The notes below the pieces were generated by a model. That model was not told the DNA's origin and made no database searches. It worked only from the letters and a program-made list of their open reading frames with translations. The position numbers were made by a program, and so were the translations under genes. DNA of 63,857 nt, the filler included, from Sluysia triapertura (lineage: Eukaryota): NCBI GenBank assembly GCA_046118255.1. It is 4 parts of 4 records of this genome, joined end to end, with 100 filler letters (N's around TTAATTAATTAA, not from the genome) between each part and the next. Parts side by side here need not be neighbours in the genome. Positions count along the whole stretch, not along the records: positions 19,455 to 36,012 come from JBJNIA010201375.1; 3 more parts are not named here. One strand, written 5' to 3'. This document shows, one piece after another, positions 19,455 to 61,957 of the stretch. Position 1 is the first letter of the stretch. Every line of letters starts with the position of its first letter.

Positions 19455-20234
19455 GTAACAAAGAAAACGCATAAATTTCTTTATCTTTCGAAACTTATAC
19501 ATGATCTTACTTTCATCTTTACTTTTCTGAATATATTGAAATTTAAAATGAAGAAGAAGCACGATCTGTTGTTATATGTATGGTTTTCCTTATTAATTTA
19601 CGAGTCTTAATGATATTTCTGCTAATGTTCTAGATAAAATGATGTTTCTATTTGAAAATGTTATTAAAACGTACATGATTCTGACTTAATTATTTTGAAG
19701 TAGTGTAAGTGTTGAGAAGAGTGCAGAATGTTCACTGGTGTTTTGAAAGAAAGTCCTATTTGGTTGTTGGAACTTAATGATAAACGATCGTGCATTTAGA
19801 ATGTTTGGGTTATTTTTTGAAGATTTTTAGTAAGTAATCTTGAATGTAATTATGATTGAATTGTTAAGAATGAAGAATAAGTGTTTTGAATGATTTTTGC
19901 TGTAGTTTAATGGTTTGAAATGTAATTGTGATTTGAATGGTATGAGGTATCGAATACATATTTTAATGAATTGTTTAATGTAACTTGATGAGATTGTAGA
20001 TTTACAATGTTTTGAAAGGTTAATGTTTATTTTGATAGATGTGAAGCGAAATGAGGTATGAAAGCGATTGAGGTGAATTTTACAGAATTGTTATGTTGTT
20101 AAAGAATATGATTTTAGATATGATGAGTTAGTTTCAAATGGATTTAAAATGTGTAAATTGTATTTGGAAGTTTATGCTTTTAATGTGTTTAAATTTTTAT
20201 GGATTTGGTTAAGTTTAGTGAGTTGGCCACCAGA
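19455..20234 (-). mobile_element. TGT-headed A/C-skewed element
   Basis: Minus-strand head TCTGGTGGCCAACT; 3' end TAAGATCATGTATAAGTTTCGAAAGATAAAGAAATTTATGCG...TTTGTTAC matches the other copies. Confidence 0.7.
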
Positions 20235-20859
20235 GTTGCGATATTATTACCAATTAATTTATAAATTAAAATTCTTCTGAAAAAACCCTAATTTTATTTT
20301 ATTTTAATAGTTATATTAATTGTACTGTTGAAAAGTGTAAATATCAATTAAAGAAAATTCAATAAAAATCTGAAGTTACATGAAAAATTTCAAACTGTTT
20401 TTTTCTTAATTTAAACTCGTAAATGTTATGATTAATTTTTGTTTACTTAAAAGTTATTCGCAATATGACTTTTAGTTTTATTCTGTTATAATTACTCCAG
20501 CTTAGCTTTATTTATAAATAGTTTATATGAAAATTGGAGTCTGTTCATCTCTGATGTAAGAGATAAAGGTGCTAAAAAATTTTAAACTTTTCAAACTTAA
20601 CTAAAGCATATTAAACTAAACAAAATCTATAAATTACTCTAATTTTTGTGATGTGATATTATAGTATTTATTGAATTGTTTAAAAGATACTTTAATGTTA
20701 TTTAAATTAAAGTTAACATAATGCGAATTATTAATACTAAAATAAAAATTAAGAATATTAACGTTTGACGTTTGATAAGTATTTATTGAAATTTCTTTTA
20801 TCACTTTTTAAATTAAGATTAAATTTACTAAAAATTGAATAAGAGAGATAATACAAACA

Positions 20860-21762
20860 TTATATATTAAAGTTGAAATTTAATGAAATAATAACTAAAA
20901 AGTTTAATGTTAACATTTTGCTAAACATAAAATATTGGAATGTTGCTGAAAATATCTCAGGCAGGACTTTAAATTGATCAATAAACGAATCAACATTGTC
21001 TAAAGAATGAAAATATAAATATCGTACATAAAATAAATCTGTATCTCTGATCTTGAAAATCATTCTTCGAGATGTTACTAAATTCGGTGTATCATATTGT
21101 GTGCAAGAGATGTTTAAGGGACCAGTAGTTTGATTAAATCGCATGGATCTTTAAAAGCGACATCACTAATGATCACGACATCGCTAATGAAAACTAGTAA
21201 CGTAGAAATTTTCATAATAACTTTTATTAGTTTTAATATAATTTTCAATATTAACTAATCTCATGACGAATTTAGATGGAATTATCATCCATATCATTTT
21301 AGTAGGTGAAGTTAAACATTTCTTTGTAAATCTAAGATAAAGTAAGTCGATGGCATAATATTTTATTCGACGTTTCGTAGCTACTTTCATAAAATAACAT
21401 CTGAATTTTCTGTAAACGTCAACGAGATATTGAGGTTCATCTCCAAAACATAAATGGTTAGTTATAGAATTTAATGTATCTAATCTTGAAGTGAACATAG
21501 TATAACATTGGCTATTTTTCATTGCTGCTATAGATAATTTTGACATCTCTTTACAATTATTTCCGTGTAAATGATCCTCTGTTATAGATTTGTCCGATGA
21601 TTCTCGTTTATAAGTCATAGAGAATGAAGTTAGTGGCATTATTGGTAGTTGTGTACCATCGTCATTCTTAGGTTCACCACCAATGTATACGACATAATTT
21701 GCAACAAACATTAAAAAAGGATTTCAAAATAATTGTCATAAAATAATAAATTTTTTTGCCAT
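20860..21762 (-). pseudogene. Interrupted orphan gene (ORFs 21184-21711 and 20860-21144)
   Basis: Two coding-like ORFs separated by a short tandem duplication containing stops; the upstream ATG at 21762 is in frame but followed by two TGA codons. Confidence 0.5.
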
Positions 21763-22115
21763 AAAATTTTCAATCTTTTAAAAGTTTTAATGCTTATTGT
21801 AATTGTGTTTAAAATGGACTAGAAAATTGTGAATTTTAATGCTGAGTACTCTGTCTAAATTGTGAAGGAAAATAAAGTGTGTTAGCGTTTTCTTAAAAAA
21901 GACTTAAACTTATTCACTGCAAATTATCTGATAAGTCGGTTCGCCTAATATATACGATTTGTACCACTATTGGAGACATACTATTAGGTTTACTTAATTC
22001 TACTAAACTAAACTAACTTTTCACTTAGGACTTATCTTTAATATCAATCACTTTAATTATTTTGTGTTACAACCTTTTACTAGGTTTGTTTAATTGAAAA
22101 TTTATATTTTATAAA

Positions 22116-22410
22116 TTACGCGACCCGTATTAAGGTGTTGCTTTTAAAAACCCTTTGATGAATTTATATATTACGCAACCCGTATTAAGGTGTTCCTTTT
22201 GAGAAAACGAATTTTAAATTAATTATGCGAAGTAAAAAGTTACTCGAACTTATTAACATGTATTAATAAATAAATTTACAGTGAAATAAAAAGTAAACTG
22301 ACAATGCAACAGGGTAATTATAATAAAGATAATAGTTGTTTATTCAACCTCGGTTGGTAGTTGCGTTAAATGTTAAATGATTTTTCGCAACCCGTATTAA
22401 AATGTTGCAT
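22116..22410. repeat. Three copies of a ~23-bp motif CGCAACCCGTATTAAGGTGTTGC
   Basis: Copies at ~22119, ~22174 and ~22386; imperfect hairpin GCAAC...GTTGC. Confidence 0.75.
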
Positions 22411-23282
22411 GAAACAAAAAGATTTTACGTAGTATTTTACACTTCCTATTAAAGTGAAGTGGTTCCAAAACTTATAAAAAAATTAATTATTTTGATGACA
22501 TGGAAATTTGTCTAATTCCTAAAATGTTCTTTTATATATATAAATTTTACTTACAAGATGGCTTCTGTTCTTTACTTATTAATAATAATTTACTTAATTT
22601 TTTCTTTATTTTGATTCGAAAAATAAATTATTAAAAATAAAATTACTTTTCTTTATTAATTTGAATTTTCTTACTTTGTCAAATTAAAACAAAATTTTTA
22701 TTTTGAATTTTCTTTATTAATTAAAACAAAAAAATTTTCATTATACAAAATTATTTAATTTCTTTTAATGATTTTTTATGAATTTAATTTTATAATTTAT
22801 AATATAAAATAATGAATTTTTATAAATAAAAAAATAAAATTTTCAATACTATTAATGAACATAAATAAATAAATTAATGAACCAAAACAAAATAAATAAC
22901 TTTACACGTGTAACTAACTCTTGTAAAATTTCAGTGTCCAATAAAAAGCAACTGTTTTGTTACTACATAAAATTTACATAATCTTTAATAAAACAAAACT
23001 GTCAGATGATGACAGTAAATAAATTATTAGATAATTAAAAATGTCGGAATTGACAGAATTATATTACTTATACTAATAATGATAATAATAATAAAATAAA
23101 AATAAAATGAAAATAATAATAGTAAAATGAATTTCTTCTTTAGTAAATATTTCTTGATAGTGTCTTATCCTTTTCTAAATTAACTTGCATGAAATAATGT
23201 AAGATACCATATAACAACTACTCTGATTCTTTCTGGCGTTTCTGCATCTGTTTCAGTTTTAGGAGTTTTAAGTGTTTCTGTG

Positions 23283-24113
23283 TGTAGTGGCCAATTCTTA
23301 ATTTCCTAAAAATCTCACAATTTTAATGCCAATTTTACTCAACATATTCAAATCACAACAATCAGTTTACAAAAAAACATAACACTTAAATCAGTCACAT
23401 TTCATATTATCGAATTACATTAACTGATTCATCATAAACAACATTTGACATTCATAATAAGTAAACAACATATATTTCTTAAACAACTCGTCTAATACTC
23501 TCAACCAGTCATCTCACACCATACTTTGATAATTAAGACCAAGGAATCCATAACATTCACTCAATAGTCATCATCTCAAACAATCACAACACATAATATT
23601 TAAATCATAAATGTATCAACACTACCCAACAACACTAACAAATACCTGAAACATAGAAAGCATTTGTGTTACAACTTCGAATCAGTTGTACTAATTCAAA
23701 CCCATTTCAGCTACACATAACCATTATCAACATTTTACAACAACATTGTGAATACACTAAGATTTGTTTTGTAATTGTTTTTCAAATCAAATAAACTATA
23801 ACCTATTAACTAGTCTTTTAAACCATTACATTCAATGCATAAATCGTATTTTTAATTATGAAACTTTAAATAAATCTCAAGAAATTATTCTAACATCCTT
23901 CATTCCAGTTACAACTTAAAGCATTTCTCTGTTTTTACAAAATAAAATTTATGTACAAGTAGAGCATAATGTACCGTGTTATTGTTGCTCCTTCACATAT
24001 TATCAACAGCTTTTATCTTTCATTTTTAACTCCATATGTAAGAATTAAAGAATTCGACAGAAAAGTTCGTGTAAATTTCAAAAGAGAGATTTATGCGATT
24101 TATTTTTGTTAGA
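23283..24113 (+). mobile_element. TGT-headed A/C-skewed element (cassette A)
   Basis: Head TGTAGTGGCCAATTC; conserved 3' end ...AAAAGAGAGATTTATGCG; followed by (AAT)/(TTA) tract. Confidence 0.7.
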
Positions 24114-24202
24114 CGATAATAATAATAGCAATATTATTGTTATTATTATTATAATCAATCATCAAACCATTTTCAAACATTTTGTTTACTTATTAGTTGT
24201 CG

Positions 24203-24365
24203 CCATCATCAATATTGACACTCTGTTCACTATTTTATTAATATGTCAATATTGATGATAGTAAATCATCAAAAAACTAATTTGCTATTTGATCATTAAA
24301 TATCATCCAATCACGACTGTAGTGTATATATAATCATTTTTGAAGTCGTGATTGGATAACAAATC
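24203..24365 (+). promoter_or_regulatory. Dyad + CCAAT module (cassette A)
   Basis: CCATCATCAATATTGACA (24203-24220) / TGTCAATATTGATGATAG (24244-24261), then a perfect 14-bp IR ATCCAATCACGACT (24305-24318) / AGTCGTGATTGGAT (24344-24357). Confidence 0.75.
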
Positions 24366-24497
24366 GTAATATACTCACTATCAGTGTTATTATTGACTAA
24401 AAATATCATTAGAGTGATTAGTAAATACAAAAATAATTACAACTTTTTGGTGAAATTTACTAAATGCATTTTTACAATAATAAGATTTTAAAAAGTT

Positions 24498-25692
24498 ATG
24501 AAAAGAACTTCTCCGAATCAACCGACTGTTAGAAATTCCGTGAAATCAGTTTATACCCAAACTTTAGTAAAATGTACTGTTAATAATGATATTCTAAAAC
24601 CGAGTAATAAATTGTTAGCGAAGCAATTAATAAAGAATTCTAATGAGTTTAATGAAATCTATTTAGATCAAAACCCAAAAACAGAACAAATTTCAAATGT
24701 TTATGACGTATTTTCCTTTCGTAATCACAATAAAGCTATCATTAAAATAACTACCCCTTTTGATGTTTCCGAACATAATGCAATTTCTGTAATACACTAA
24801 AGAACGAAGATAGTTTTTACCCCGAAACACTTAGAACAAATGTTTGTAAAGAAGTTAAAACTGGATGTTATAATGAAACGCCAGTAATGAATATTAGTGG
24901 GAATAGTCGATCCAATAAGTCAAATCTTAAAGATTTAACCGATTTAGTTAATAGTCGAAAACTAACAAAATCAACTCGTCTTATTGCCACATCTATGACA
25001 TTATTTTCAAAAAATTTTTTATCATTAATCAAACTACGACAAAATAATTTAATAAATGAACTAGTTCAACAAAAAGGTTATGGAATGTCCCAAATCATTA
25101 ACGAACAATTATTCAGTGAAAGTATACTCAAAGATGAATTAGTCAACCATGATGACAAAAATTTAGGCAGGAGTACACAGATTATGCATAATCTACATCG
25201 TATGTCAAAGAACTATCTACCAAATCGACCGAAGGTCACCACCATGATACAAAGTAAAGCAATTGATTTGTCCATAGACAGAGTAATCCCCACGTTAGAT
25301 TAATATTAAAAATATATGCTGCAAATGGTTTTAAGATTGATCTGTATAAATTTATTATAAACAAATGTTGGTATAAAATAAATCATAACTCAGAAACACA
25401 TTTCGAATCTCTAAAGAAATTAGTCACGCTAAAATATTTTGCTATTCTGCAAATTAATGGTATCAACTTAATGTTACAACTCAAACAACTAAGGATGTTA
25501 TTAACAATCAATTGAGAGAATAATTCAAGCATAAGCACATTCGATACACGTGAATTCATGAACAAGACCTTTTGCAGTAATATATTAGGTATAAGCATTT
25601 ATTCTATAATTTTTTTGATTTATATTTTAGATAATAAATTTAAGCAAAGGATCAATGGAGTACGACAAGTCGTAGCGATGCATAAAATTTAA
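24498..25692 (+). pseudogene. Frameshifted orphan gene with a 42-nt intron
   Basis: ORFs 24498-24800 and 24887-25303 join through a frame change near 24790. Coding-like sequence continues to ~25588, then a GT-AG intron 25589-25630, then DNKFKQRINGVRQVVAMHKI*. Confidence 0.55.
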
Positions 25693-26179
25693 AACTGTTG
25701 TTTTATGTTATAAATTTCTTGCATTTAAAATTTTTATAGTTATTTTAACAGATAAATTACGAGATTTAAATTTATTATTTCGAGATAAAAGAAATTTATA
25801 TTATTACATAGCTTATATAGAAAAAACGAGTTCGAAACATAACTCATTGATGTTTAATGAATTAAAAGATGAAACTAAGCTCAGATGTAAATTTATATAC
25901 ACATTAACAGATACGACTCATCTTAATATCGTCTAACTCTATTGTACATCAAAACCTTCTATTAAATTTTATTATGACAATCATTGACTTGACTATTACT
26001 TCGCAACCTATAAATCTGAAACCAAATATGAACCACCTATCAAACACAAATCAGTTTTGTTTCTCCAATATTAATTTGTTAAAAATATTTTTAGTTAAAA
26101 TCTATAAAATCTTTAAACTAATATCACAACTCAAAATATTAAAACCCCCAAACTGTGATTGAGATTACATTTTCTGTTA

Positions 26180-26384
26180 AATTAAAAAAAGGAAGGAAAG
26201 TTTTGATAGAAAATTAATGAATTTAAAGGCGTTAACAGAAATTCCATTTACTTTAATGTTATTTGAAATTTAAAATACGAATTTAATGATTTTTGATGTA
26301 ATGAATGGTTTATATGTTGTAAAGGTATGATTTTTAGTGTAGTGTAAAGTATTAAAATTTTGTGTGAAGATGTTGGCCACCACA
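26180..26384 (-). mobile_element. TGT-headed element, truncated
   Basis: Minus-strand head TGTGGTGGCCAACATC followed by A/C-rich sequence. Confidence 0.65.
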
Positions 26385-27099
26385 CTAATATCATTTTGAA
26401 CCACATATAATGCCATTTTTTAAGTTAAAAATAATTTATTTTATAAACTTTATTAAATGATTATTTTACAGATTTTATTTAATATGGTTTTATACTTTAG
26501 GTTATTGAACTTAGAATCTTCTTTAAAATATTTTTCAATGTCTTTAGAATAGTTTTCAAATAGTCTCTAAAATCTTCAAATTTTCTCTGACAATATTAAT
26601 CTTAGAAATCTTAAATTTTTTTCAAAATTTTTCGTTTCTAAAATCTTAAAACAAAAAAATAACTTAGAAAATTTTCTTAAATATTTCTTCTGATCCCGTC
26701 AAGCTAGACGTTAGAATAAAATTCCTGGGTAAAAATGCATTTACTCATAGTGTTTTTTGTGGGTGCTATATTATAGTCAAAAATTTATTTAGTTCTTTTC
26801 ATAATTAATTTCTTTAATTAATCATGTTACTTAGCCCATTTCTCTATAATAAAACACATTTTTAAATCTCAGTATATATATAGTTTTGCTATTATTTGGC
26901 CAATTTTTTAATATAAGATAATACAATTTGAAAGCGTTCTTTATGAAGTACGTTTGTCTTATCTCTTAGTTTAAAGATTTTGTTATAATTATGAACTGGT
27001 TGGCAATATTGCTTAAGGCACTTTGAAATTATTTTTTTACATTGATTATTAGTGTCAAACCTACTGAATTAGGTTTGTAGGTTTGTAGGGATAATTACA

Positions 27100-27520
27100 T
27101 GAACTCTTTTCCAATTCTATACAAACATGTTCATACCAAAAACACAACATCGAAAATGAACTTTAATATAATTAGATATAATATTCTTGTTAAATACTTG
27201 CAAATATTTTATAGATATACAAGAATCAATCGAATATATTCAAATTATATTCAAAATTATTTCTTACATTTGCATGAAATCGACTTTTTAAAGCTTTTGT
27301 GGAGTTGTAAAAGATATTGCTAATAAATTCATATCCTTGAAAAACTGCTTGTCTATTGTTGAATTTGTATTGGCAATAATCATCATATTACCAGAAAGCT
27401 AAATAGATGTTGAACTTGTAATCTTTTGACTATATCTTGTCTTAACACACTCATTTTTAGCTGCATGATGAAAATCAATTTCTACAACCGCATCATAAAC
27501 TTAATCTTCTTTATCAATCA
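27100..27520 (-). pseudogene. Decayed coding fragment
   Basis: KIKFMMPVVEIDFHHAAKNECVKTRYSQKITSSTSI*LSGNMM... with stops and frameshifts. Confidence 0.3.
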
Positions 27521-27949
27521 TTTATTATAATATTTAAAAAATTAATGAAATCTACAATATTAACATTCATTGGCTTACAGATAAATTAATAATAAAATAA
27601 TTGTTACTTAAATTAATAAGCAATATATTTTTTTAGATTTTTGAAAATGACATTCAATAAACAAGTTGTGTAATTATAAGTTTTATTTCAAGTAAGAAAA
27701 TCGTACCACTTCATTTTTGTCATTTTCTGAATATGAGAAACACTTTTTCAAATAGTCATACATAAACCCATTACTCGCTTCAATTCAAAAATACAAAAAA
27801 ATTAAATTAACTGTATAATGATATACTAACCAATTGGAACTATTTGTGCTACTGTTTTTAATACTTTCATGAAGCATGTGATATTTTATTTAGAAGTTGC
27901 AGTTATACAAGAAAAATATTTGAAAAAAACCACAAATTTTCAAATATGA

Positions 27950-28035
27950 TTTTCTGAAAATAAAATTCTAGAATTCTAAAGATTTTGATTGGTCGCTGAT
28001 TAGTATAAATACTGGCATGAGTTGAGAATCAATTC
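27950..28035 (+). promoter_or_regulatory. HSE-like + CCAAT + TATA module, copy 2
   Basis: TTCTAGAA (27966), GATTGG (27987), TATAAATA (28004), then TGAGAATC; homologous to 8185-8290 on the minus strand. Confidence 0.55.
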
Positions 28036-30054
28036 ACAATTTCATATTTCAATTTTGGTATACCATTTGGTTTTCAATACAGTTGTAATATTTTATTACT
28101 GTCTGGATATCGACCATTTTGAATTTTATTAAGTCAATTTAAATTAGTTAAAATTAGTACGTTTTCGTTATATAAAGGGCGTTTTATTTTTCGGAACTAA
28201 AACTTAAAATCATTTTTTAGAATATTTGAATCCGATTTATTCATTTTAGAAGAAAATTAGAGCTTTAATTTTAATACATATTTCTTGATTTATTTTTGTA
28301 ATATCCATTATATTTGAGTTCATGTGACCCGAAAAGTATATTATTTACGCATATTGAAATTACAATTTTGTATCTAATCTTTAGTGAATAAAAATTGTTA
28401 ATATTGTGGATAATTAACATAAATACAGTAATTAAATTGCTATTTTTAATATAAAGCAATCGTTGATAACAAAAGATTTGCAACTTTAGCAATTTGTATC
28501 TGTTATTAGCATTATAAATACAATAATTTACTAAGAAAGAAGTCTGGTTTAAATTATAAATCCAATGTTTAGTAATGGATAACTTTTGTTAACTTTATCT
28601 ATAAAATTACGAAATGTGAAACAATTCTTATGTACACTAATATTATAACATTCTAATGATACTTCATTAAACAAATGTAGATAGATTAAATAATAATTAT
28701 TTGAAATATGAAACAAATGTATTCTAATTTATTTATACATGACTTATTACAACTTTTAGAACATACAAAACATGTTGGTGTCATAATATTTTCGTTGTGT
28801 GAATTAAAATTCTCTTTAATTTTATTTTATTAAACTTTATCAAATTTAAATGTCTGAAAACTGTTTTATACTTTAAAAACTCTTGCTCTTTATTATTAAT
28901 TCAAATCCCTTTATAGAATTTATAATTATTCTGAACTTCTCAATTAATGTTATCACTTTGTATTACACTTAACTGGAGGTATGAATTAGTATACTGGTCC
29001 TCGCTGTTTAGGATAGAAGTGCTTAATAATTTGTTAACGATAGTTATACGGTTATTCTTTAATCAACACTCAACTGTAATGGAATTTTATTCGTAAATGT
29101 TCAGGTGTCAACTTAATCACTGCGATAAATTATTAATAATCCGATTGTAATTATTTAGTTCAAATTTTATTACTACAACCTATCACGCTATCTTCAATTT
29201 GTGACTTGTATATTTATTTATTTATTTATTTATCTTTTCTCCTCCTTCTTTAGGGTACTACTCTCAATTTAGTTAAAAAATAAAAACCAAATAATTTATT
29301 TACAAATTAATATAAAATAAACATGTAGACAAAATTTTATAGAATGTAAAACTTTAATTTTAAAATTAATGTTTATAAAAGTCAATTAAAATCATTTAGG
29401 AATAGTATAAAATCTTGGTACAATTGTCTGTGAAGCTGACAAATCAAACTGTTCAGCAAGTGGAATTGTTTTCTTCGTAAAGCAAACCTCGGATGCTATG
29501 TGTTATCTTGAAAGTTTTACTTCCTTTTATAGTATTTTCAATAGTATTTACGTAATTAAATTATTTCCAATATTAATGACTGTAATTACGATAGCATTTT
29601 TAAATAATTTAAACGCAACAATATATAACAATATTTTCTTTAATAATAATAAATTCAGTAACTGAAATTATTTAATAAATGCTAGTATAGTAGTAACTAT
29701 TAATTCATTAATAATTCGTATATACGTATGTATATAACAAATNNNNNNNNNNNNNNNNNNNNNNNNNNNNNNNNNNNNNNNNNNNNNNNNNNNNNNNNNN
29801 NNNNNNNNNNNNNNNNNNNNNNNNNNNNNNNNNNNNNNNNNNNNNNNNNNNNNNNNNNNNNNNNNNNNNNNNNNNNNNNNNNNTAGAATTTTAAAATGAT
29901 TATTTGTTTTATTTTTAATCTAAAATTAAGTGTTTTTGCTATTAAATTTTGAATTTATGTTAACACTATTAAATCTCATTTTAAATTGATGAAAGGCACT
30001 ATAGTCTTAATGAAAATGGTTTTAATTTTACTTTAAATGGAATTTACATTACCT

Positions 30055-31440
30055 TAGAATTTAATAAATATTGTTACATTGGCATAACTTGGTTTATATA
30101 ATCTAAAGAAAAATCCTGCTGTAAGGTAAAGATATAAGAATTAAGAATAAGAAAACATTCTTCGTGTATACTAACTCTTAAGCAGGTAATCATCTCCCTA
30201 TAATTATCTACAAGTTTAAATTGATCAAACAAAAACAGTATTAAAACACTAAATAGATTAAAACACAGTTCACTCGATTTGTACATAAATCCGCTTCAAA
30301 TATCATTGTCAGGAAACTCGAGGTGAAATTCGCTTATTTGAGCTTCGCGATGTAACAGCATTTTAATGATAACATAGATTTTTTTATCAATCTGAGATTT
30401 GCTATTATTATCTATTGGTTTAAGTAAATGTGTTAACTGACAGAATCCATTAAAACATGAATTAACATTAGCACCATAATCATTCAACCAATTTGCAAGA
30501 TCTTTACATACTAACATTGGTGCTCCATTGATATCCTTAATTCGATACTGATGTTCAATATATATGACTGTAACGTAGTCATTCAAATTTCCATGATTAT
30601 CGTTCAATAAAGCATTTGCTTAATGTATCTTACCTTTTTTGTTCGCATTAAACATGAGATAGAAATGTTGAGAAGCTAACTCGCAATTACATTTAAGAGC
30701 TAACTCGACAATTACATATTAAATTTGATTGATTTTATTTTAACGAATTTATCATATTAAATTTGATTGATATTTTACTTATTTCATTATTTACATTTCT
30801 TTGAAATTATTTATGTAAATATTATTATTATTATTATATTTTATTATTTTAAAATTTAAATGTAGCAAAAATACATAAATTAGTAAAAATATAAATCGAT
30901 TGATAAAAAATACAAAATAAATTAAAATATAAATTTATTGATTAGTAAAAATATGATAATATAAAATAAATTTGGTTAAATTGGTGTGATGGCCGTGATA
31001 TATTGTTATCATTTTTGAAATTAAAAGTTACAAATTTAAAATTAAGAAAAATGGACTTAAGGTCCTTATGGTTGTGACAACGTTGTGACTTAAACTTGCG
31101 GATGAAATAATCTAAGAAACTATAATAATAAACACGGATGTATTCAACTTTAAAGATAAAATTATCATGAAAATAGTGTACAATTATCTCCATTATATAT
31201 ATTAAAAGACTTAGTAAGCGGTCATCATCAATGAATATTGTCTGATTACAAATCGTTTTTAAGTGATTTGCCAATGCATCTTCCACAATCAATAGTTAAA
31301 TATTCAATTCGCAGAGTAATGTACACAATCCATTAACAATTCATTTACCAGTAATTATTTTTATTAAGTAAAAAGGTACAACGTCGAATATTTATTACAT
31401 CTACTTTAAGTTTCACAAAATTTATCAAATCTATCGGTTA
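30055..31440 (-). pseudogene. Decayed ankyrin-repeat-like gene
   Basis: ORFs 30296-30607 and 30074-30286 are in the same frame across a TGA, and an in-frame TAA lies upstream (KKGKIH*ANALL). WLNDYGANVN and KMLLHREAQI are ankyrin-like. Upstream ORF 30942-31292 is separated by AT-rich intron-like DNA. Confidence 0.45.
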
Positions 31441-31529
31441 CCAATAAATTGTAATATTTAGAAATCAGATTTTAATTTTTATTCAAAATTACATAATCCT
31501 TTAGATGAAAATAAAAAATAATAGTAGTA

Positions 31530-31789
31530 ATAAAAGGAGGATGTGAAAATTCACACAATGTTGGTGTATTTGGGTTGAGCGATATCGGCAGATTGAAGTA
31601 ATGTTAAATGATAAATTATCATAACCTGAATGATATATTCTATTTAAGTTAAAATATATTAGTGTAATATGTTTAAAGTGTGTTATATTTTAGGTGTTGT
31701 TATGTGTGCAAGATGTGGCAAAGGTGTACTGTGTATTGAATATTTGTGGTTGGGTTTGTTAAAGGTTCATGAATGAGTTGAACACTACA
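31530..31789 (-). mobile_element. Short TGT-headed A/C-rich element
   Basis: Minus-strand head TGTAGTGTTCAACTC, strongly A/C-skewed body. Confidence 0.55.
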
Positions 31790-32881
31790 ATTGGTAATAG
31801 TTTTAATGGTTTAATTAAAAAAATAAAATGGTAGAAAGAAATTCAATATATAAGGTAAGCCTATTTCTGATAATAGGACACAATTAGAATTAAGGAAATA
31901 AAATTAAGCAAGTCTTTGGAAGAGTAAGCCACGATCGCGAATCAACTTCAATTCAAAAACGATTTCCATGAAAAAGTAATTCAGTTATTTATAAGTTTCC
32001 CTAAGTCCTAATTTTTATAGAATAGAACCTAAAATTTTACTTAAAATAAATAACTTATTGTCAGACCGTAAAAAGGCTGACTTAAAATCAAACTAAAATT
32101 TATTTTAAAAAATCTAAGAAGAATTTCTTAAGATTTTAAACTCATTATCGTTAATATATTTACCATATTTACCTGCTGTAAAATTTTTTCGATTGATTTT
32201 ATTGTGAAGTTTATTCTGTTTTGTGTAGAATATAATTGTTCAATAGTTGCATTAAATTGTGTTATTTAAAATCCGTGCTAATTTTAATCAGACCGTAAAA
32301 AGGCCGTCTTAACTTGCAGATAAAATAAAAATTAAAATTACTGTATCAAGTACTACTACCAGTTGACTTTCTGCTCAAACTATCGTTTACAGTTAACTTC
32401 ATTACGTTATAAGTCTAATTAGACAGTCCTCAGCTAGTGACAGAAACCGTATCTAATTAGCCGTACTCATTCAGACGTAAACTGTTTTGCTAAGTAGGTT
32501 CTTTTCAAGACAGAACACTTGCAGAAATTTTCCATTTAAGCTTTATATGATATACTAAAATACTATTAGTCAACTTGTTGAGTGATTGATACTAAAATTA
32601 TTTTATCGACATTTATTGCACTAAAAATTAACTTATGACTTTGTGTCTAGTTACTAATTTTGGTGTCTATTATATAATAAACCAATAAAGACAACTTCAC
32701 TCGTTGCCGTAATTTAGATAACAATTTTTAAAATTTTATTATTATACATAAAATTATTATCTTTTTTTTAATTTGTCTTCTGTGTTACTGCTTTAGCTAA
32801 TTATTGATTTCTGCTTTCAACTTCTTCAACATTTGTTTGGTTTGGTTAACATATTTGTTAATTATAGAATAAACATTACAG

Positions 32882-32902
32882 TTAGGGTTAGGGTTAGGGT
32901 TA
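32882..32902 (+). repeat. Interstitial telomere-type tract (TTAGGG)3
   Basis: ttagggttagggttagggtta. Confidence 0.8.
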
Positions 32903-33199
32903 TTACGAGCTTTATAGTATCTGTATTTGATTAAAAATATATTAACACCATTTCTGACGTTACTGCTTCGTCTTAGTACAATTTTATAGTAAAGAAAAGC
33001 AAATAATTTAAAAAATGTAAATTTATTAATTATTATTACACTTAAAGTTTTGATTTCTATTATTGCATCACTATACACTTCACCGACCCGAGTCTTTAAT
33101 TGAATCTCTAAAATAAAAACAATGCTTAAAAAATTGTAAAGATAAACTAATAAAATGATTACATTAATATGCTTCGCCAAGGAATGAATCGTTGTTAAA

Positions 33200-34186
33200 C
33201 TGGTAGACTTGTCATTTTCTTGTTTTCCGGAATGATACATGATTGTGATGTTTGCTGTCTATTAATTCATCAAGTCGATAATAATTCACGCTTCTTTCAG
33301 TAGCCGATCTATGTGTATGACTATAATGGTTCCAAAACCATATTTTTATTCTAAAAGATCCATATTTACTGCAAACTACTCCATGTGTAGAATTTTACAA
33401 TACATTATGTATTTGTGTAAATTAGACTTTATTAATGATGACATTACAAATTGTTCAAGAATCAAACAGTGTTTCATAAATTGGCATTTCAGATTTCTTA
33501 AATTTTGTCTGCAAACTGTTTGTTGAGGTACTCTGATGAGACCTAAGTCGTAGTGCTGATAATCAATTGGTTCCTTAATGTAATTATTCAACACTACATA
33601 TCTAATAACTGGATAGACATCTGCTAATTGCCAACAGTTTCGTACAAACATTGCATTACAAATATGATGATATTTATCAACTTTAAATTCGTCTTTATAA
33701 CGATGATCTAGAGCTTTATAATAACCGGTTATTATTTCACGATAAAACCCTACATAACTATAAATTATCAAAATTATAGAGGCATAGGAGCATTCAAAGT
33801 CTTTTAATTGAAAAAGGCCATCTTTAGATATCTGGTTTCAGTGGATCAGATGACAGTATTTTCACGTTACGTGCTGTTATCCATAGAAATATTACTCGAG
33901 CTTTTTCAATTTCCTGAAGATGATATCGATGTATATCATCACAGATTACATCATAAAATGATAGATATTCATCTTGACTCATTCGAATAACATGAGATTT
34001 GACTGTTACTAATACAGATGTATCGTCATAGATTTGAAATTTGAAGTGACTTGATGGTTCTGGCAGTGAAGCTTTAGAACTGTCTAGTGGTTTTAGTAAT
34101 ACGAAATTTTTTGATGCTAACAGAGACATTTGAGATTTTTCAATTTTCGTTATCATCAATCTTTTTCTTTTCGTAAATTTTTGCAT
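33200..34186 (-). pseudogene. Hillarin/kyphoscoliosis-peptidase-like (transglutaminase-fold) gene, disrupted
   Basis: EIEKARVIFLWIT, ECSYASI...SYVGFYREIITGYYKA, RNCW...V, LILEQFV...LIKS follow the order of the hillarin/KY core. +1 frameshift near 33826 and in-frame stops after 33376. Confidence 0.6.
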
Positions 34187-34273
34187 TTTTGTATTTTTTG
34201 TAACAAAGAAATTGTGTTGTGATATAATTACTTCATGAAAATTTTTTAATGTCTATCTGACAAGAGGACCATT

Positions 34274-34448
34274 GTGATTGGTCGGCTACTAATAGTAACA
34301 AAATTTAGTGTAACACTGATTGGATAGTTAGCATTAATGGTATTATTAAAAATCAAATTATATGATTGTGACGAAGCGTCAAAGTAACCACTATCAATGA
34401 TGACAACACAACATGTATAGTAACTCCAAGTGTCACTATTGATAGTGG
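34274..34448 (-). promoter_or_regulatory. Dyad + CCAAT module (cassette B)
   Basis: CCACTATCAATGATGACA (34388-34405) / TGTCACTATTGATAGTGG (34431-34448); on the minus strand ATCCAATCAG and GACCAATCAC follow toward the ATG at 34186. Confidence 0.75.
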
Positions 34449-34538
34449 CAATGTTTTTAACGGATTGACATAGATTAAAATTTCAAAAATAATGACGAAA
34501 TATAATAATAACAATAATAATAACCACAGCAGTATTAA

Positions 34539-34592
<54 letters not shown>

Positions 34593-34593
<1 letters not shown>

Positions 34594-35399
34594 GTATCAA
34601 TACATAAATTCTTGCTTTCTGATTAAACATAATCTTTCTGTTTTCCTCTAAAATTCTTCTTAACATATTACAAATGCAATGAATTAATTAAAGAAATGAT
34701 AAAATTGAATACAATAATAACGATAACAAGATGCGCGATGTTCAAGTTATTATTGTTCCTTTGATTCTTAGAGGTTTCTTGATATATTGTAATAAATTTA
34801 AAATGTGTTTAGAACAAAAGTTTTTGAGTAGAATTTGCTTTAACTGAATTGGTAAGCGTAGTTAGCGTTTCAAGATATGATGGTTGATTTATGTCGTGAA
34901 ATGAAATAGAGAATGTTAGAATGCGTTCTTAAATGGTGATTAAAGTTCATATTTGAAAACGACATTTAAGTATTGGAAGATCGTGAATAAAAGACCTATT
35001 GAGAAGATTGTAATTTGGTAAACATAAAAGAGCAACTACAACTCTTAGTATATTTAAAGTATTATTGTGCAGTGTTTTATGATATTTGTTTATTCGTTGT
35101 TTTTAGTGTTGTCATTTGTGTTGCTAGTGGTTTAGTAGTGTAAAATGAAGAATTCAAAATTATTGAATGGATAATCTCGAATGTGTTTTTTGTTTGGTTA
35201 TTATGAATGTCGAGTAACATGTTTTTGGTAGAGTAGTTAGTGTAATTGGTAATGTTGGGTGAAACTGTGATTTGTATGTTGTGGAATTCTGGGTAAACTG
35301 TTTTGTAGGTATATAAGAGATAAATGTATGAGTGTTGGAGTCTAAAAAAATATTCGTTTTTTAATAAAATTTTAATGGTTGTGAAGGTTGGTCACCACA
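34593..35399 (-). mobile_element. TGT-headed A/C-skewed element with TG...CA ends (cassette B)
   Basis: Minus strand TGTGGTGACCAACC...AAGATTATG...GAATTTATGTATTGATACA followed by a long (AAT)n tract; no clear TSD. Confidence 0.7.
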
Positions 35400-35850
35400 T
35401 AAATGATAGGAAATTTCTTCGGTTGAATAAGCTGCTAAGCTCGATACATTATCCATATCTGGAAAATTTCCGAAAACTTCATCTAAATCTGCATTTGTTA
35501 TTTCATTTAATGTACATTTACTATAATTGCACGCTTGAGTATTTTGTTTACTTAATTCCTCGACATAATTTTGTAGAAATAGCAATCATGTTTTCCTGTA
35601 TTATAATTTAATCATTTTCAGTGTCTCAGTTTCACTTCCAGACCACTGGATAGGCTTCATTCTAGATAAATGAGTTAATTGGGATTGCATCCGATTTTAT
35701 GATTCTGAAGCATGATGGATAACTATTTGTTTAGTAGAATCTTTACGCTGCATAATAATCAACAAAAAACACCAACTGGTATTGCAAAACATAGAAAAAT
35801 GGAAGTGAAATTGAGAGTGAACTTTTAATTTCTACAGGAACTGTTTCTGG
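35400..35850 (-). pseudogene. Decayed exon of a single-pass membrane protein, cut off by the element at 35399
   Basis: ag|ETVPVEIKSSLSISLPF / FAIPVGVFLLIIMQRKD...; ORF 35361-35585 runs directly into the TGTGGTG head. Confidence 0.4.
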
Positions 35851-35972
35851 TATAATATAAAAATGGTATTGTCAAAAATGTCATTCATTTAATAATATTC
35901 ATTTAATATATTAATAATAATAATATTCATTTAATATAATAATATATTATAACATTTAATAATATTCGTTTA

Positions 35973-36012
<40 letters not shown>

Positions 36013-59425: not shown

Positions 59426-60321
59426 TGCAGTGCCCAACCTATTACCTTAATAAATTTTATTAAAAAATTTATATTACACATTTTCAAAAATCCATTAAAA
59501 ACATTCTTTTTACATAAGTTTTTGCCAACATAACATTCTCTCCCAAAATCTACAACTCACATTTTTCAATTCACAACTAGTACAAAAATAATATAATCAT
59601 ATTCAGTTCAACACCACATAACAACTTTGTAAAATTCGTCACAACCGTTTTTATATCTTATTCCTTTTTACATCCACCAAAATCAACTTCCAATTTTTTC
59701 AAAACATTTCAAATCTTCAACCTTATAACATTCAAACCACAATCACATCCAATAGCACCAAATTACACTAAGAAATTCATCAAAAATATTTTATTCGTCA
59801 TTTCAGAACAATCTAACTACAATCACATGAGAAATTAACTATCAGACACCTTTAAATTAATTCAAACATTCTAAATTCATGATATGCACATTTAATTCTC
59901 AACAGCACATAAAGACATCACTGCTTAAATATATCAAGAAAATAAATCACATTTTTAACATTCTATAATCATTTTGCGAAAATATCAAAAGTTAGACTAT
60001 AACTTATCTACTTTTTATACACTAAACTACACCCTTATAACATATTAGTAACTCACGATCTATAAACATTTTCAACTAGAAACATTATTTCATTTAGAAC
60101 ATTAGGCTGAATTATCTAAAATTCATGCAAAACTAGAAAACAGCAGTTAAAATTTATATTAAAACGCCTAACGCATTATCTTACATCTCTAAGCTGTAAA
60201 ATCGCAAATTCACAATTCTGTAAACTTCATCTGTTTTTTAAGTCTAACATGTTCAGAAATTCAAGAGAACAAAAGCAAGATCATGCATAAAGCTTTAAAA
60301 GACAAAGAGTTTACGTAGTTA

Positions 60322-60322
<1 letters not shown>
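59426..60322 (+). mobile_element. TGT-headed A/C-skewed element (cassette C)
   Basis: Head TGCAGTGCCCAACC; 3' end CAAGATCATGCATAAAGCTTTAAAAGACAAAGAGTTTACGTA; (AAT)n at 60323-60363. Confidence 0.7.
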
Positions 60323-60366
<44 letters not shown>

Positions 60367-60442
60367 TTTTTGTTATTATTATTATTATTACTGTTTTAAT
60401 TTTCATTATTATTTATTATTAATTCATTTGATTTGGTAACTG

Positions 60443-60623
60443 CCATTATCAACGGTGACATATTTAATTTACATATATGGCTCAATGTCATAGTTGATGA
60501 TGGTTGGCATCATAGTGTAATTTGCTGACGTATTATTTATTTTATCTGTTCCCATTGACCATCCAATCAGAACAAGCATTACTGTTGTTATCATTTCAAT
60601 ACCCCTGGTTGGATGACCAATCA
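60443..60623 (+). promoter_or_regulatory. Dyad + CCAAT module (cassette C)
   Basis: CCATTATCAACGGTGACA (60443-60460) / TGTCATAGTTGATGATGG (60486-60503), then CATCCAATCAG / CTGGTTGGATG and ACCAATCA. Confidence 0.75.
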
Positions 60624-60660
60624 ATAATTACTTTATCACAAATTTTTATTTACTAAAAAT

Positions 60661-61190
60661 AATGTTGTAAATATTTTAACTACGGAGATAGAATTTAACA
60701 AATTTCTACAGAATATTACATTTGATATTTATGATACTCGTTACGTATTTATTAAAGAAATCAGTATATTTTCCTTTGGTTTAGTATGTAAAGTGAAGCA
60801 TAAAATTAATTCTGAATGTTGCGCGATAAAAAAAAGTTCGAAATCCGTTTAAGAGCGAAATAACTTTAATTGGAAGTATGCACGAAATTAAAATTATTAA
60901 TCATTTTAACCATCGAAACATTAATATTATTGATATATTTCTTAAACAAACTTCTAATTTAAATGAAACATTCGATATTTACGTAGCGTTTAATTCAATG
61001 GAAACAGATTTGCATAGTATAATATCATCTAAACAAGAACTTTCTGATGATCATAGTCGTTATTTTTTGTATCAAATATTTGGTAGCCTTAATCACATTC
61101 ATTCGGCTGCAATAATACATAGAGACTTGAAACCTGCTAATGTTCTTGTCAATCGTAGCTGATTTTGGGATGGAAAGGTCAGTTGAACGA
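60661..61190 (+). pseudogene. MAP kinase (ERK5/MAPK7-like) N-terminal part, disrupted and truncated
   Basis: RYVFIKEISIFSFGLVC...CAIKK, +1 shift in an A-run near 60835, EIKIINHFNH...METDLHSII...RYFLYQI...IIHRDLKPANVLVN, then a frameshifting deletion before VADFGM. No TxY or APE motif follows. Confidence 0.85.
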
Positions 61191-61957
61191 ATAAATCCAA
61201 TCGGGGTTTCTGGTTCGAATTGTAATTATATACTTCAAGATGTTCTAAAGATGATAGAAGAATTTCGACAATTAAAAAGGTTTTTACTCGACGCTCCTAT
61301 TTATAATACTGATGTACAATTTAAGGAACATATGTTTTTAGTATGCATGAAAGCTTTCAAAAAAACTGTTTATAGATTAATTTATATAATCAGAAAAGGG
61401 TACAATATGTACGAAGTTAAATCAAAGAAATTTTGTCTGAATGAACGACCGGAAAGCTATAATGAAAATAATGCTAGTATTGAAAATTTTAATAATATTG
61501 ATGAAGATACTGTGCTGGAGTCATTCAAAATTATCATAATTCTAACAAACGAAGTCTAGAAATAACACAACCAATAAGTTTATTTAGTTCGACTCTTTGT
61601 TTATCAAATAAATTAAATCGATGTTCGACAATACAAAGTCAGACTCTAAAAAATGACACTTCACCGATTCATGAATGTTAAATGACTCCTAAAAGTTTTA
61701 AACGATGCATTCAAAATAATAGTGATTTGTTTTCATCATTTATTCTCAATGAAAAGATTCTGGACGTCGTTATCAGCATGGCAGAGCAAATCAAAGTAAT
61801 GTGTTCAGATAATATTTTTAATCATGAAGAAAAAATTTGTGCAATTAATTTAAATGGTTTAGTTTTGGCTGTTTGCGACCTATTCGAATTACACAATGAA
61901 CTTAAAATAGCGGAATGTACGACACGAATGACACATTATCCAAAACAGCATACCTAA
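61190..61957 (+). pseudogene. Non-kinase coding-like sequence fused downstream of the MAPK fragment
   Basis: ORFs 61140-61559 and 61682-61957 read as helical protein with no kinase subdomains VIII-XI. Confidence 0.4.

What the first reader, a model, noticed from the sequence alone, without database searches (positions are those of the whole stretch)
23283..25692. Cassette A of a repeated four-part architecture: element, (AAT)n, dyad/CCAAT module, variable cargo gene
Seen: the same ordered, co-oriented layout occurs at 23283-25692(+), 35399-33200(-) and 59426-61957(+). Each has (1) a ~0.8-0.9 kb element with conserved head and 3' motif (AAGATCATG...AGARTTTAYG), (2) an AAT/TTA tract, (3) an 18-bp inverted repeat followed by CCAATCA boxes, and (4) within ~40-140 bp an unrelated host-type gene (orphan, hillarin-like, MAPK), each frameshifted. 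Here the cargo keeps a 42-nt intron and is followed by another + strand A/C-rich fragment (~25950-26160). Inference: a non-autonomous vehicle with a built-in promoter that captures or duplicates different genes, or a shared stage-specific promoter that attracts this element. I know of no described element with this layout.
Basis: partly seen in the sequence, partly recalled or inferred. Interest (0 to 1): 0.85.

Follow-up and report, generated by a model that had tools for sequence, protein, structure and literature searches.

The report
Shared upstream cassette before unrelated genes
Two unrelated genes in this very AT-rich, invertebrate-like genome each follow the same ordered 1.2-kb stretch (boundary motif, G-poor spacer, AT palindrome, hairpin dyad, twin CCAAT boxes); it is most likely an old, dispersed promoter-bearing unit, not a vehicle that captures genes.

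Summary
The 18-nt dyad arms (6 matches against 0.32 expected) and paired CCAATCA boxes exactly 42 bp apart occur only at these two places. They appear in the same order and the same orientation, 89-143 nt before the start codons of unrelated genes.

New here:
- The 'head' is a 13-16-nt motif, TGTRGTGRCCAAY. It occurs five times in 16.5 kb.
- At every head, G falls from 9-16% to 2.5-5.5% and C rises to 17-25%. The effect fades with distance.
- Element bodies are barely alignable. A and B share one real 195-nt block. Heads, tails and modules are conserved.
- Head-to-ATG distance is 1215 nt in A and 1213 nt in B.
- The AAT tracts are (AAT)n/(ATT)n palindromes, and A-B homology runs through them.
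- Cargo B is colinear with residues 1-273 of KY/hillarin-like proteins and starts at their natural N-terminus.

I found no terminal repeats, target-site duplications or transposon proteins.

Best reading (0.4): one ancient, dispersed upstream unit that supplies an NF-Y-type promoter. The gene-capture reading is not supported.

The parts
23283..23298 (+). Cassette A head motif (TGTAGTGGCCAATTCT), where G-depletion begins
23299..24037 (+). Cassette A G-depleted body (G about 6.6%, C 20%, A 39%). It contains the 195-nt block homologous to B (23729-23924).
24038..24112 (+). Cassette A tail: GTAAGA, a purine-rich run, ATTTATGCG, then a T-rich run ending in AG
24107..24161 (.). Cassette A (AAT)n/(ATT)n palindrome (80% self-complementary over 55 nt). 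It shares an interrupted 18-mer with B.
24203..24261 (.). Cassette A dyad: 18-nt arms at 24203-24220 and 24244-24261 with a 23-nt spacer
24305..24358 (.). Cassette A twin CCAATCA boxes (24307-24313 on +, 24349-24355 on -), 42 bp apart. They form a 14-bp-stem palindrome with TATATATA between them.
24498..25692 (+). Cargo A, an orphan gene. Open frames at 24498-24797, 24779-25300 and 25267-25512; in-frame TGA at 25513; then 25516-25588, a 42-nt GT..AG interval (25589-25630), and 25631-25692.
25940..26185 (+). E: a G-depleted block without a head motif, downstream of cargo A
26200..26384 (-). F: a perfect head motif (26384-26372) with a short G-depleted block, converging on E
35384..35399 (-). 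Cassette B head motif (TGTGGTGACCAACCTT)
34606..35383 (-). Cassette B G-depleted body and purine-rich tail (ATTTATGTA at about 34609-34601)
34500..34597 (.). Cassette B (AAT)20 followed by (ATT)n, forming a palindrome
34388..34448 (.). Cassette B dyad: arms at 34448-34431 and 34405-34388 with a 25-nt spacer
34275..34323 (-). Cassette B twin CCAATCA boxes (34323-34317 and 34281-34275), 42 bp apart, both on the - strand
32800..34186 (-). Cargo B, colinear with residues 1-273 of KY/hillarin-like proteins. Frames at 34186-33827, 33837-33379 and 33394-33215; two single-base frame changes and no intron. It possibly continues in the open frame 33258-32800.
19455..20234 (-). Copy C: head (20234-20219), G-depleted body and tail (ATTTATGCG at about 19477-19468). 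It is cut by the piece edge, so its module, if any, cannot be seen.
31500..31789 (-). Copy D: a weaker head (3 mismatches) with a short G-depleted block. It has no AAT tract and no twin boxes, and at most a 3-mismatch half-dyad at 31300-31283. It lies upstream of the orphan ORFs at 31295-30077.

Best explanation
A and B are two anciently diverged copies of one composite, oriented upstream unit of about 1.2 kb.

Order of parts:
1. A boundary motif, TGTRGTGRCCAAY.
2. About 0.75 kb of strand-asymmetric spacer (G-poor, C- and A-rich).
3. A purine-rich tail ending in ATTTATG.
4. An (AAT)n/(ATT)n palindrome.
5. A dyad with 18-nt arms.
6. Two CCAATCA boxes 42 bp apart.
7. A short leader and the start codon of whatever gene lies downstream.

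How it works (inferred). The dyad and twin boxes act as the core promoter and proximal control region of the downstream gene. The boxes match the NF-Y type. The dyad is either a site for a dimeric factor or a hairpin/cruciform. The AT palindrome would be an easily opened, nucleosome-poor stretch. The head starts a process, most simply local non-coding transcription, that keeps the spacer strand-asymmetric.

History (inferred). The unit was spread long ago by duplication or transposition to positions in front of resident, unrelated genes. Since then only its short cis motifs, its length and its base composition have been held.

Shown: the anatomy, its non-randomness, the mosaic homology, and the unrelated cargos. 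Inferred: promoter function, the binding factors, transcription of the spacer, and the mode of spread.
For: - Dyad arms occur only at the two modules: 6 matches against 0.32 expected.
- Four of the five CCAATCA boxes in the window sit in the two modules, both pairs at 42-bp spacing.
- The modules lie 89-143 nt before ATGs. For cargo B, that ATG region matches the natural N-terminus of homologues.
- The modules are homologous to each other (z=8). Homology continues through the AAT/ATT tract, with a shared interrupted 18-mer.
- Head-to-ATG distance is 1215 against 1213 nt; head-to-tail is 808 against 785 nt.
- In the dyad, 13 of 18 pairs are invariant, 3 change on both sides and stay paired, and 94% of cells are paired.
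- The head motif occurs five times, against 0.73 expected for all hits with up to 3 mismatches, with a clear score gap.
- Every head marks a G drop to 2.5-5.5% that fades with distance.
- Bodies are near saturation (43-53% identity) yet keep the skew. This argues for an ongoing cause, not inherited composition.
- The cargos are unrelated.
- In human NF-Y data, double CCAAT boxes are typical of promoters, and one spacing class lies at 43 bp (PMC4889920).
Against: - Only two complete copies could be examined.
- There are no transcript data, so start sites, the direction of any spacer transcription and promoter activity are all untested.
- Copies D and F have the head and the G-poor block without the module. 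Element and module may therefore be separable.
- No mechanism of spread is visible: no TIR, TSD, LTR pair or transposon protein.
- Dyad covariation rests on two sequences and does not beat the shuffle control (59 of 500).
- Both cargos carry frame changes. If these are real, the 'promoters' sit before pseudogenes.
Confidence: 0.4

Rival explanations
1. Two separate things sit side by side. One is an old non-autonomous retroposon family: head, G-poor A-rich sense strand, conserved 3' tail, and an (AAT)n end. The other is a host promoter class (dyad plus twin CCAAT). The retroposon inserts at a preferred distance upstream of that promoter, or into TAA microsatellites that lie there.
For: - An A-rich, G-poor sense strand, a conserved 3' tail motif and a following (AAT)n tract are retroposon-like.
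- AAT-type tracts also lie upstream of both A (23070-23125) and B (35890-36012). This is what insertion into a TAA microsatellite would leave.
- TAA-targeting Dong LINEs exist, including one in a snail (PMC3812793).
- Heads with G-poor blocks occur without the module in copies D and F.
- The distance from the AAT/ATT tract to the dyad is similar in both cassettes, about 48-52 nt.
Against: - A-B homology does not stop at the (AAT)n tract. It continues through an (ATT)n run with the same interruption and on into the module.
- No target-site duplications were found.
- There is no 5'-truncation series. D, E and F do not align to the 3' parts of A, B or C.
- The heads do not resemble tRNA, 7SL or 5S.
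- No reverse transcriptase is present in the piece.
- The bodies are too diverged for an ordinary repeat family, yet their length is conserved.
Confidence: 0.22
2. The 1.2-kb unit is a solo LTR, or a similar promoter-carrying terminal repeat, from an extinct retrotransposon family. Such repeats carry CCAAT and TATA boxes in U3 and drive whatever lies downstream, as human LTR12/ERV9 does.
For: - Four of the five heads begin with TGT.
- The unit has a discrete, conserved length.
- The CCAAT boxes and a TATA run lie near the 3' part.
- A purine-rich tract is present.
- NF-Y binding to double CCAAT boxes in LTR families is documented (PMC4889920).
Against: - There is no CA 3' end with a 4-6-bp duplication at a consistent distance.
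- The piece holds no paired LTRs and no gag/pol remnant.
- The purine tract lies inside the unit, not before it.
- An inherited LTR would not be expected to show a skew gradient starting at the head.
Confidence: 0.13
3. The G-poor block is an independent transcription unit: a non-coding RNA gene, or an upstream antisense transcript from a bidirectional CCAAT promoter. The head is its promoter or its terminator. Its position next to protein-coding genes simply reflects a compact genome.
For: - The compositional switch at the head is sharp and decays with distance, like transcription-linked skew.
- The skew stops at the tail, so the asymmetric process covers only head to tail.
- In A the two CCAAT boxes face opposite ways.
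- The tail read on the opposite strand contains a CATAAAT, TATA-like run.
- The five units are spaced roughly one per gene.
Against: - There is no RNA evidence.
- Nothing in Rfam matches.
- It does not explain the fixed order and length from head to ATG in A and B.
- The one 42-nt intron in cargo A and the 55-nt interval I take to be an intron in cargo B are T-rich on the sense strand. The direction implied by the skew is therefore ambiguous.
Confidence: 0.15
4. This is the reader's vehicle: a mobile non-autonomous element with a built-in promoter that picks up or duplicates host genes or gene fragments as cargo.
For: - Different cargos follow the same unit.
- Cargo B, and the neighbouring cystathionine-lyase-like ORF (which has no cassette), align to homologues only over N-terminal parts of the family.
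- Both cargos have frame changes.
- One inverted pair of heads, A(+) and F(-), encloses cargo A in 3.1 kb.
Against: - The A/F pair has no flanking duplication.
- B has no inverted partner in the piece.
- Cargo B starts at the family's natural N-terminus with its own leader.
- There are no transposon proteins, Helitron ends or TIRs.
- The copies are ancient, whereas the cargos show few lesions.
Confidence: 0.06

Closest known systems
LTR-borne NF-Y promoters (human LTR12/ERV9 and ERV1 LTRs that drive neighbouring genes)
   Same: A dispersed repeat of about 1 kb carries double CCAAT boxes at fixed spacing and sits, co-oriented, in front of unrelated genes (PMC4889920).
   Different: Here there are no TG..CA ends with duplications, no paired copies and no gag/pol. 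The unit also has a G-depleted spacer with a boundary motif, an AT palindrome and a co-varying dyad, none of which I know from LTR12. That last point rests on my own knowledge.
Microsatellite-targeting non-LTR retrotransposons (Dong, R4 clade, which insert in TAA repeats)
   Same: An A-rich element lies next to (TAA)n-type tracts, and such tracts are also present upstream. One Dong element is known from a snail (PMC3812793).
   Different: No reverse transcriptase or endonuclease ORF is present, and no 5'-truncation series is seen. Homology between copies continues beyond the repeat tract.
Gene-capturing DNA transposons (Pack-MULEs, Helitrons)
   Same: Unrelated host-type genes or gene fragments are associated with a shared repeated sequence.
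   Different: The unit flanks the cargo on one side only. There are no TIRs with duplications. A hairpin followed by CTRR is seen in A only and is not conserved in B. Family features are taken from my own knowledge.
Conserved upstream blocks of contingency gene families (for example the 70-bp repeat with a TAA-rich run before trypanosome VSG cassettes, or ups regions of Plasmodium var genes)
   Same: A conserved, oriented upstream block containing a TAA-type repeat precedes variable genes that are often defective. This comparison rests on my own knowledge.
   Different: In those systems the downstream genes belong to one family. Here they are unrelated, and the organism looks like a spiralian animal.

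Membership tests
NF-Y-type (CCAAT) core promoter | A CCAAT pentamer with the favoured flanks (CCAATCA/G), often doubled at a fixed spacing | tested here: met
   Two CCAATCA boxes lie 42 bp apart in both cassettes. A 43-bp double-box class is reported in human data.
NF-Y-type (CCAAT) core promoter | Boxes lie about 60-100 nt upstream of a mapped transcription start and are bound by NF-Y | not testable with these tools
Only the distance to the ATG is known: 89 and 143 nt.
LTR / solo LTR | TG..CA termini flanked by a 4-6-bp target-site duplication | tested here: not met
   Four of the five heads start with TGT, but no CA end followed by a matching flank was found at a consistent distance.
LTR / solo LTR | Paired repeats enclosing a primer-binding site, a polypurine tract and gag/pol somewhere in the genome | tested here: inconclusive
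   None are present in the 16.5-kb piece.
Non-LTR retroposon / SINE | The simple-repeat or A-rich tail is the 3' terminus and is followed by unrelated flank and a duplication | tested here: not met
   A-B homology continues past (AAT)n into (ATT)n and the module. No duplication was found.
Non-LTR retroposon / SINE | A head derived from tRNA, 7SL or 5S, or a reverse-transcriptase ORF | tested here: not met
   ARAGORN found nothing. Rfam found nothing relevant at E up to 10. Pfam found no RT.
TIR DNA transposon / MITE / Pack-MULE | Terminal inverted repeats at both ends with a flanking duplication | tested here: not met
   Only one inverted head pair exists (A+/F-), and it has no duplication. 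B has no partner. The dyad itself has no flanking duplication.
Helitron | A 5' TC, and a 3' hairpin followed about 10-15 nt later by CTRR, inserted between A and T | tested here: not met
   CTAA lies 15 nt after the dyad in A, but B has no equivalent.
Hairpin RNA gene (miRNA precursor) | A match to a curated family at its gathering score, or a stem of about 30 bp or more | tested here: not met
   The MIR172 model scores 37 bits against a gathering score of 70. The stem is only 16-19 bp with a 23-25-nt loop.

The most novel reading that the evidence does not exclude
The head motif and its G-depleted, fixed-length spacer form a genome-wide, oriented gene-boundary system of a kind not yet described. 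In this reading a sequence-specific site occurs about once per gene. It launches a strand-asymmetric process (short non-coding transcription or R-loop formation) that insulates or primes the downstream hairpin-plus-twin-CCAAT promoter. The whole unit would have been copied in front of many unrelated genes.
Probability: 0.15. Interest if true: 0.75.

Novelty: new variant of a known kind. Interest (0 to 1): 0.5.

Why it matters
If the unit proves common across this genome, it would be a clear case of one ready-made regulatory cassette (boundary, spacer and promoter) placed in front of many unrelated genes. That would bear on how co-regulated gene sets and new genes acquire expression. The sharp, motif-triggered G-depletion is a simple marker. 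It could be scanned genome-wide and tied to transcription start or termination. If it is instead an old transposon relic, the finding is ordinary. It would still explain about a third of the sequence in this piece.

Tried and rejected
There is therefore no read depth, no RNA evidence and no check of the frame changes.

Searches that found nothing useful
- Exact look-up of ten ORFs: none is in the protein collection.
- HMMER search of the KY-like ORF against 1.8 billion representatives: the best hit has 30% identity. This genome is therefore not represented, and no paralogous loci could be fetched.
- Metagenome scan for the full dyad: 15 hits, all from one bacterial coding sequence in gut metagenome contigs. 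They are irrelevant and I took them no further.
- Viral-contig scan for the dyad: 0 hits.
- Homology searches for cargo A and for the two D ORFs: nothing found.
- Structure prediction for cargo A: pLDDT 42.7, uninformative, so I ran no fold search.
- Pfam on 18 ORFs: no transposon or viral domains.

Ideas tested and dropped
- Head derived from a tRNA (SINE): no Rfam or ARAGORN support.
- Degenerate telomeric or tandem repeat as the origin of the G-poor body: no periodicity.
- APOBEC-type G-to-A editing of a retroelement: the skew is strongest at the 5' end, which is the opposite of what I would expect. This is inference only.
- Ultra-short introns in place of frameshifts in cargo B: homologues align straight across both junctions.
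- Dicyema as the source organism: its genome is 36.7% GC with 6.2 introns per gene, which does not fit (PMC6736024). The organism remains unidentified beyond a spiralian-like affinity.
Full report
**Context**

The piece (19455-36012) is 25% GC. It holds several short-intron or intronless ORFs, spaced roughly one per 3 kb. The one cargo with recognisable relatives has its best hits, at about 30% identity, in a cephalopod, a bivalve, annelids and flatworms. The source therefore looks like a fast-evolving spiralian animal. Its own proteins are absent from the collections. Everything below rests on this piece alone.

Both cassettes have the same parts in the same order and orientation.

| Part | Cassette A (+) | Cassette B (-) |
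|---|---|---|
| Head | 23283 | 35399 |
| Tail, ending in ATTTATG | about 24095 | about 34603 |
| AAT tract | 24116-24155 | 34593-34533 |
| Dyad arms | 24203-24220 / 24244-24261 | 34448-34431 / 34405-34388 |
| CCAATCA boxes | 24307 and 24349-55 | 34323 and 34281 |
| Cargo ATG | 24498 | 34186 |

- The dyad-arm pattern gives 6 matches against 0.32 expected, and no shuffle reaches 6.
- Four of the five CCAATCA boxes in the window lie in the two modules. Both pairs are 42 bp apart.
- The cargos share no translated similarity.

**Refinements to the anatomy**

- *Head motif.* The head is a discrete motif, TGTRGTGRCCAAY. It occurs five times (A, B, C, D, F). All hits with up to 3 mismatches number 6 against 0.73 expected. 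A position matrix separates the five (scores of at least 20.9) from everything else (at most 9.8).
- *Composition switch.* Every head marks a sharp change. G is 9-16% in the 200 nt before the head and 2.5-5.5% in the 200 nt after it. C rises to 17-25%. The effect weakens with distance and ends at the tail.
- *Bodies.* They are almost unalignable (43-53% identity). A and B still share one clear 195-nt block (65% identity, z=12). The tails are related (A-C z=6.4; B-C z=4.8), and so are the modules (z=8). D, E and F share only the head or the composition.
- *Lengths.* Head to tail is 808 against 785 nt. Head to ATG is 1215 against 1213 nt.
- *AAT tracts.* They are (AAT)n followed by (ATT)n, which makes them palindromes. 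A and B share an 18-mer there with the same interruption. Homology therefore runs through the tract and does not end at it.
- *Dyad.* Three of the 18 arm pairs differ between A and B on both sides and remain paired; 13 are invariant. With only two sequences this is suggestive and no more (59 of 500 shuffles do as well).
- *Second palindrome.* In A the two CCAAT boxes form a second 14-bp-stem palindrome. In B they are direct repeats, so that hairpin is not conserved.

**The cargos**

Cargo B is colinear with residues 1-273 of KY/hillarin-like proteins and begins at their N-terminus.
- Blocks such as EKARVIFLWITARN are well conserved.
- It has two single-base frame changes, no intron, and no in-frame stop inside the frames.

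Cargo A is an orphan.
- Its open frames of 102, 174 and 82 codons are far longer than chance allows at this composition.
- It has two frame changes, one in-frame TGA (25513) and a plausible 42-nt intron.

Each frame-change window contains a short homopolymer run. Without reads I cannot tell assembly errors from young lesions. The neighbouring cystathionine-lyase-like ORF covers only residues 19-171 of the 402-residue enzyme, and its catalytic motifs have decayed.

**What it most likely is**

Promoter function. The dyad and twin boxes sit where a compact promoter should: 89-143 nt before ATGs, one of which is validated by homology. They are conserved islands in otherwise saturated sequence. Double CCAAT boxes at fixed spacing are typical NF-Y promoter architecture. 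In human data one class lies at 43 bp, and such boxes also ride on LTR repeats (PMC4889920). I therefore read the module as the downstream gene's promoter.

One unit or two. The continuous A-B homology from tail to boxes, and the near-identical total length, argue that element and module form one unit that was copied as a whole. The cargos are unrelated, and cargo B looks like a resident gene with its natural start. The unit was therefore more probably placed in front of genes than the genes were captured by it.

The skew. It persists in bodies that have otherwise diverged to near-randomness, it starts sharply at the head, and it decays with distance. This points to an ongoing, head-triggered, strand-specific process. 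Local transcription is the simplest candidate, but its direction cannot be inferred safely. The 42-nt intron in cargo A and the 55-nt interval I read as an intron in cargo B are T-rich on the sense strand, whereas the spacer is A-rich.

**What it is not shown to be**

- There are no TIRs or duplications. Only one inverted head pair exists (A/F), and it has no duplication.
- There are no LTR ends, no Helitron ends conserved between A and B, and no tRNA-like head.
- No ORF carries a transposon or viral domain, and viral contigs give no hit.
- The retroposon reading keeps some weight. The strand is A-rich and G-poor, the 3' tail is conserved, AAT tracts lie on both sides, and Dong LINEs are known to target TAA repeats, including in a snail (PMC3812793). 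It is weakened by the homology that continues past the tract and by the lack of a truncation series.

**Verdict**

The gene-capture interpretation is not supported. A dispersed promoter-bearing upstream unit is the best reading, at about 0.4. Retroposon-plus-promoter, solo-LTR-like and independent-transcript readings remain open. A genome-wide scan and transcript mapping would settle it. Interest is moderate at 0.5. The interest lies in the motif-triggered, fixed-length G-depleted spacer, for which I know no described counterpart.

Noticed in passing
window 22108-22417: Three copies of a 43-nt repeat, richer in G+C than its surroundings (core ACGCRACCCGTATTAAGGTGTT), lie in the spacer between the cystathionine-lyase-like ORF and cassette A (family D2).
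   Followed up: no
window 32061-32110 and 32288-32337: Two copies of a 50-nt repeat with a small hairpin-like core (TCAGACCGTAAAAAGGCYG) lie between cargo B and copy D (family D5).
   Followed up: no
window 32881-32902: A telomere-type repeat, 3.7 units reading CCCTAA on the - strand, lies inside a 153-codon open frame (32800-33258, -). There it would read NPNPNPN.
   Followed up: partly
window 21187-21723 (-): An open frame of 179 codons matches residues 19-171 of cystathionine gamma-lyase (E 2e-10). The PLP-enzyme signature motifs have decayed and the C-terminal 230 residues are missing. It has no cassette upstream.
   Followed up: partly
window 27980-28015: A fifth CCAATCA box (on the - strand, read as GATTGG) is followed 17 nt later by TATAAATA. 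This looks like a promoter, but no ORF of 60 or more codons follows on the + strand.
   Followed up: no
window 25940-26384: Two G-depleted blocks converge and meet near 26190-26240. E (+) has no head motif. F (-) has the only perfect head motif in the piece. Together with A's head, F makes the only inverted head pair, 3.1 kb apart and enclosing cargo A.
   Followed up: partly
window 23283-24112, 34606-35399, 19455-20234: Short words ACATT, CATTC and ACATTC are about twice as frequent in the G-poor bodies as a first-order Markov model predicts (25 against 13; 15 against 6.9; 9 against 3.1). They may be repeated binding sites.
   Followed up: partly
window 34211-34200 and 19466-19455: The 12-mer TTTCTTTGTTAC ends the tail of copy C, at the piece edge. 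It also sits 14 nt before the ATG of cargo B. A similar run (TTTTTGTTAG) ends the tail of A. This could be a shared acceptor-like or leader signal.
   Followed up: no
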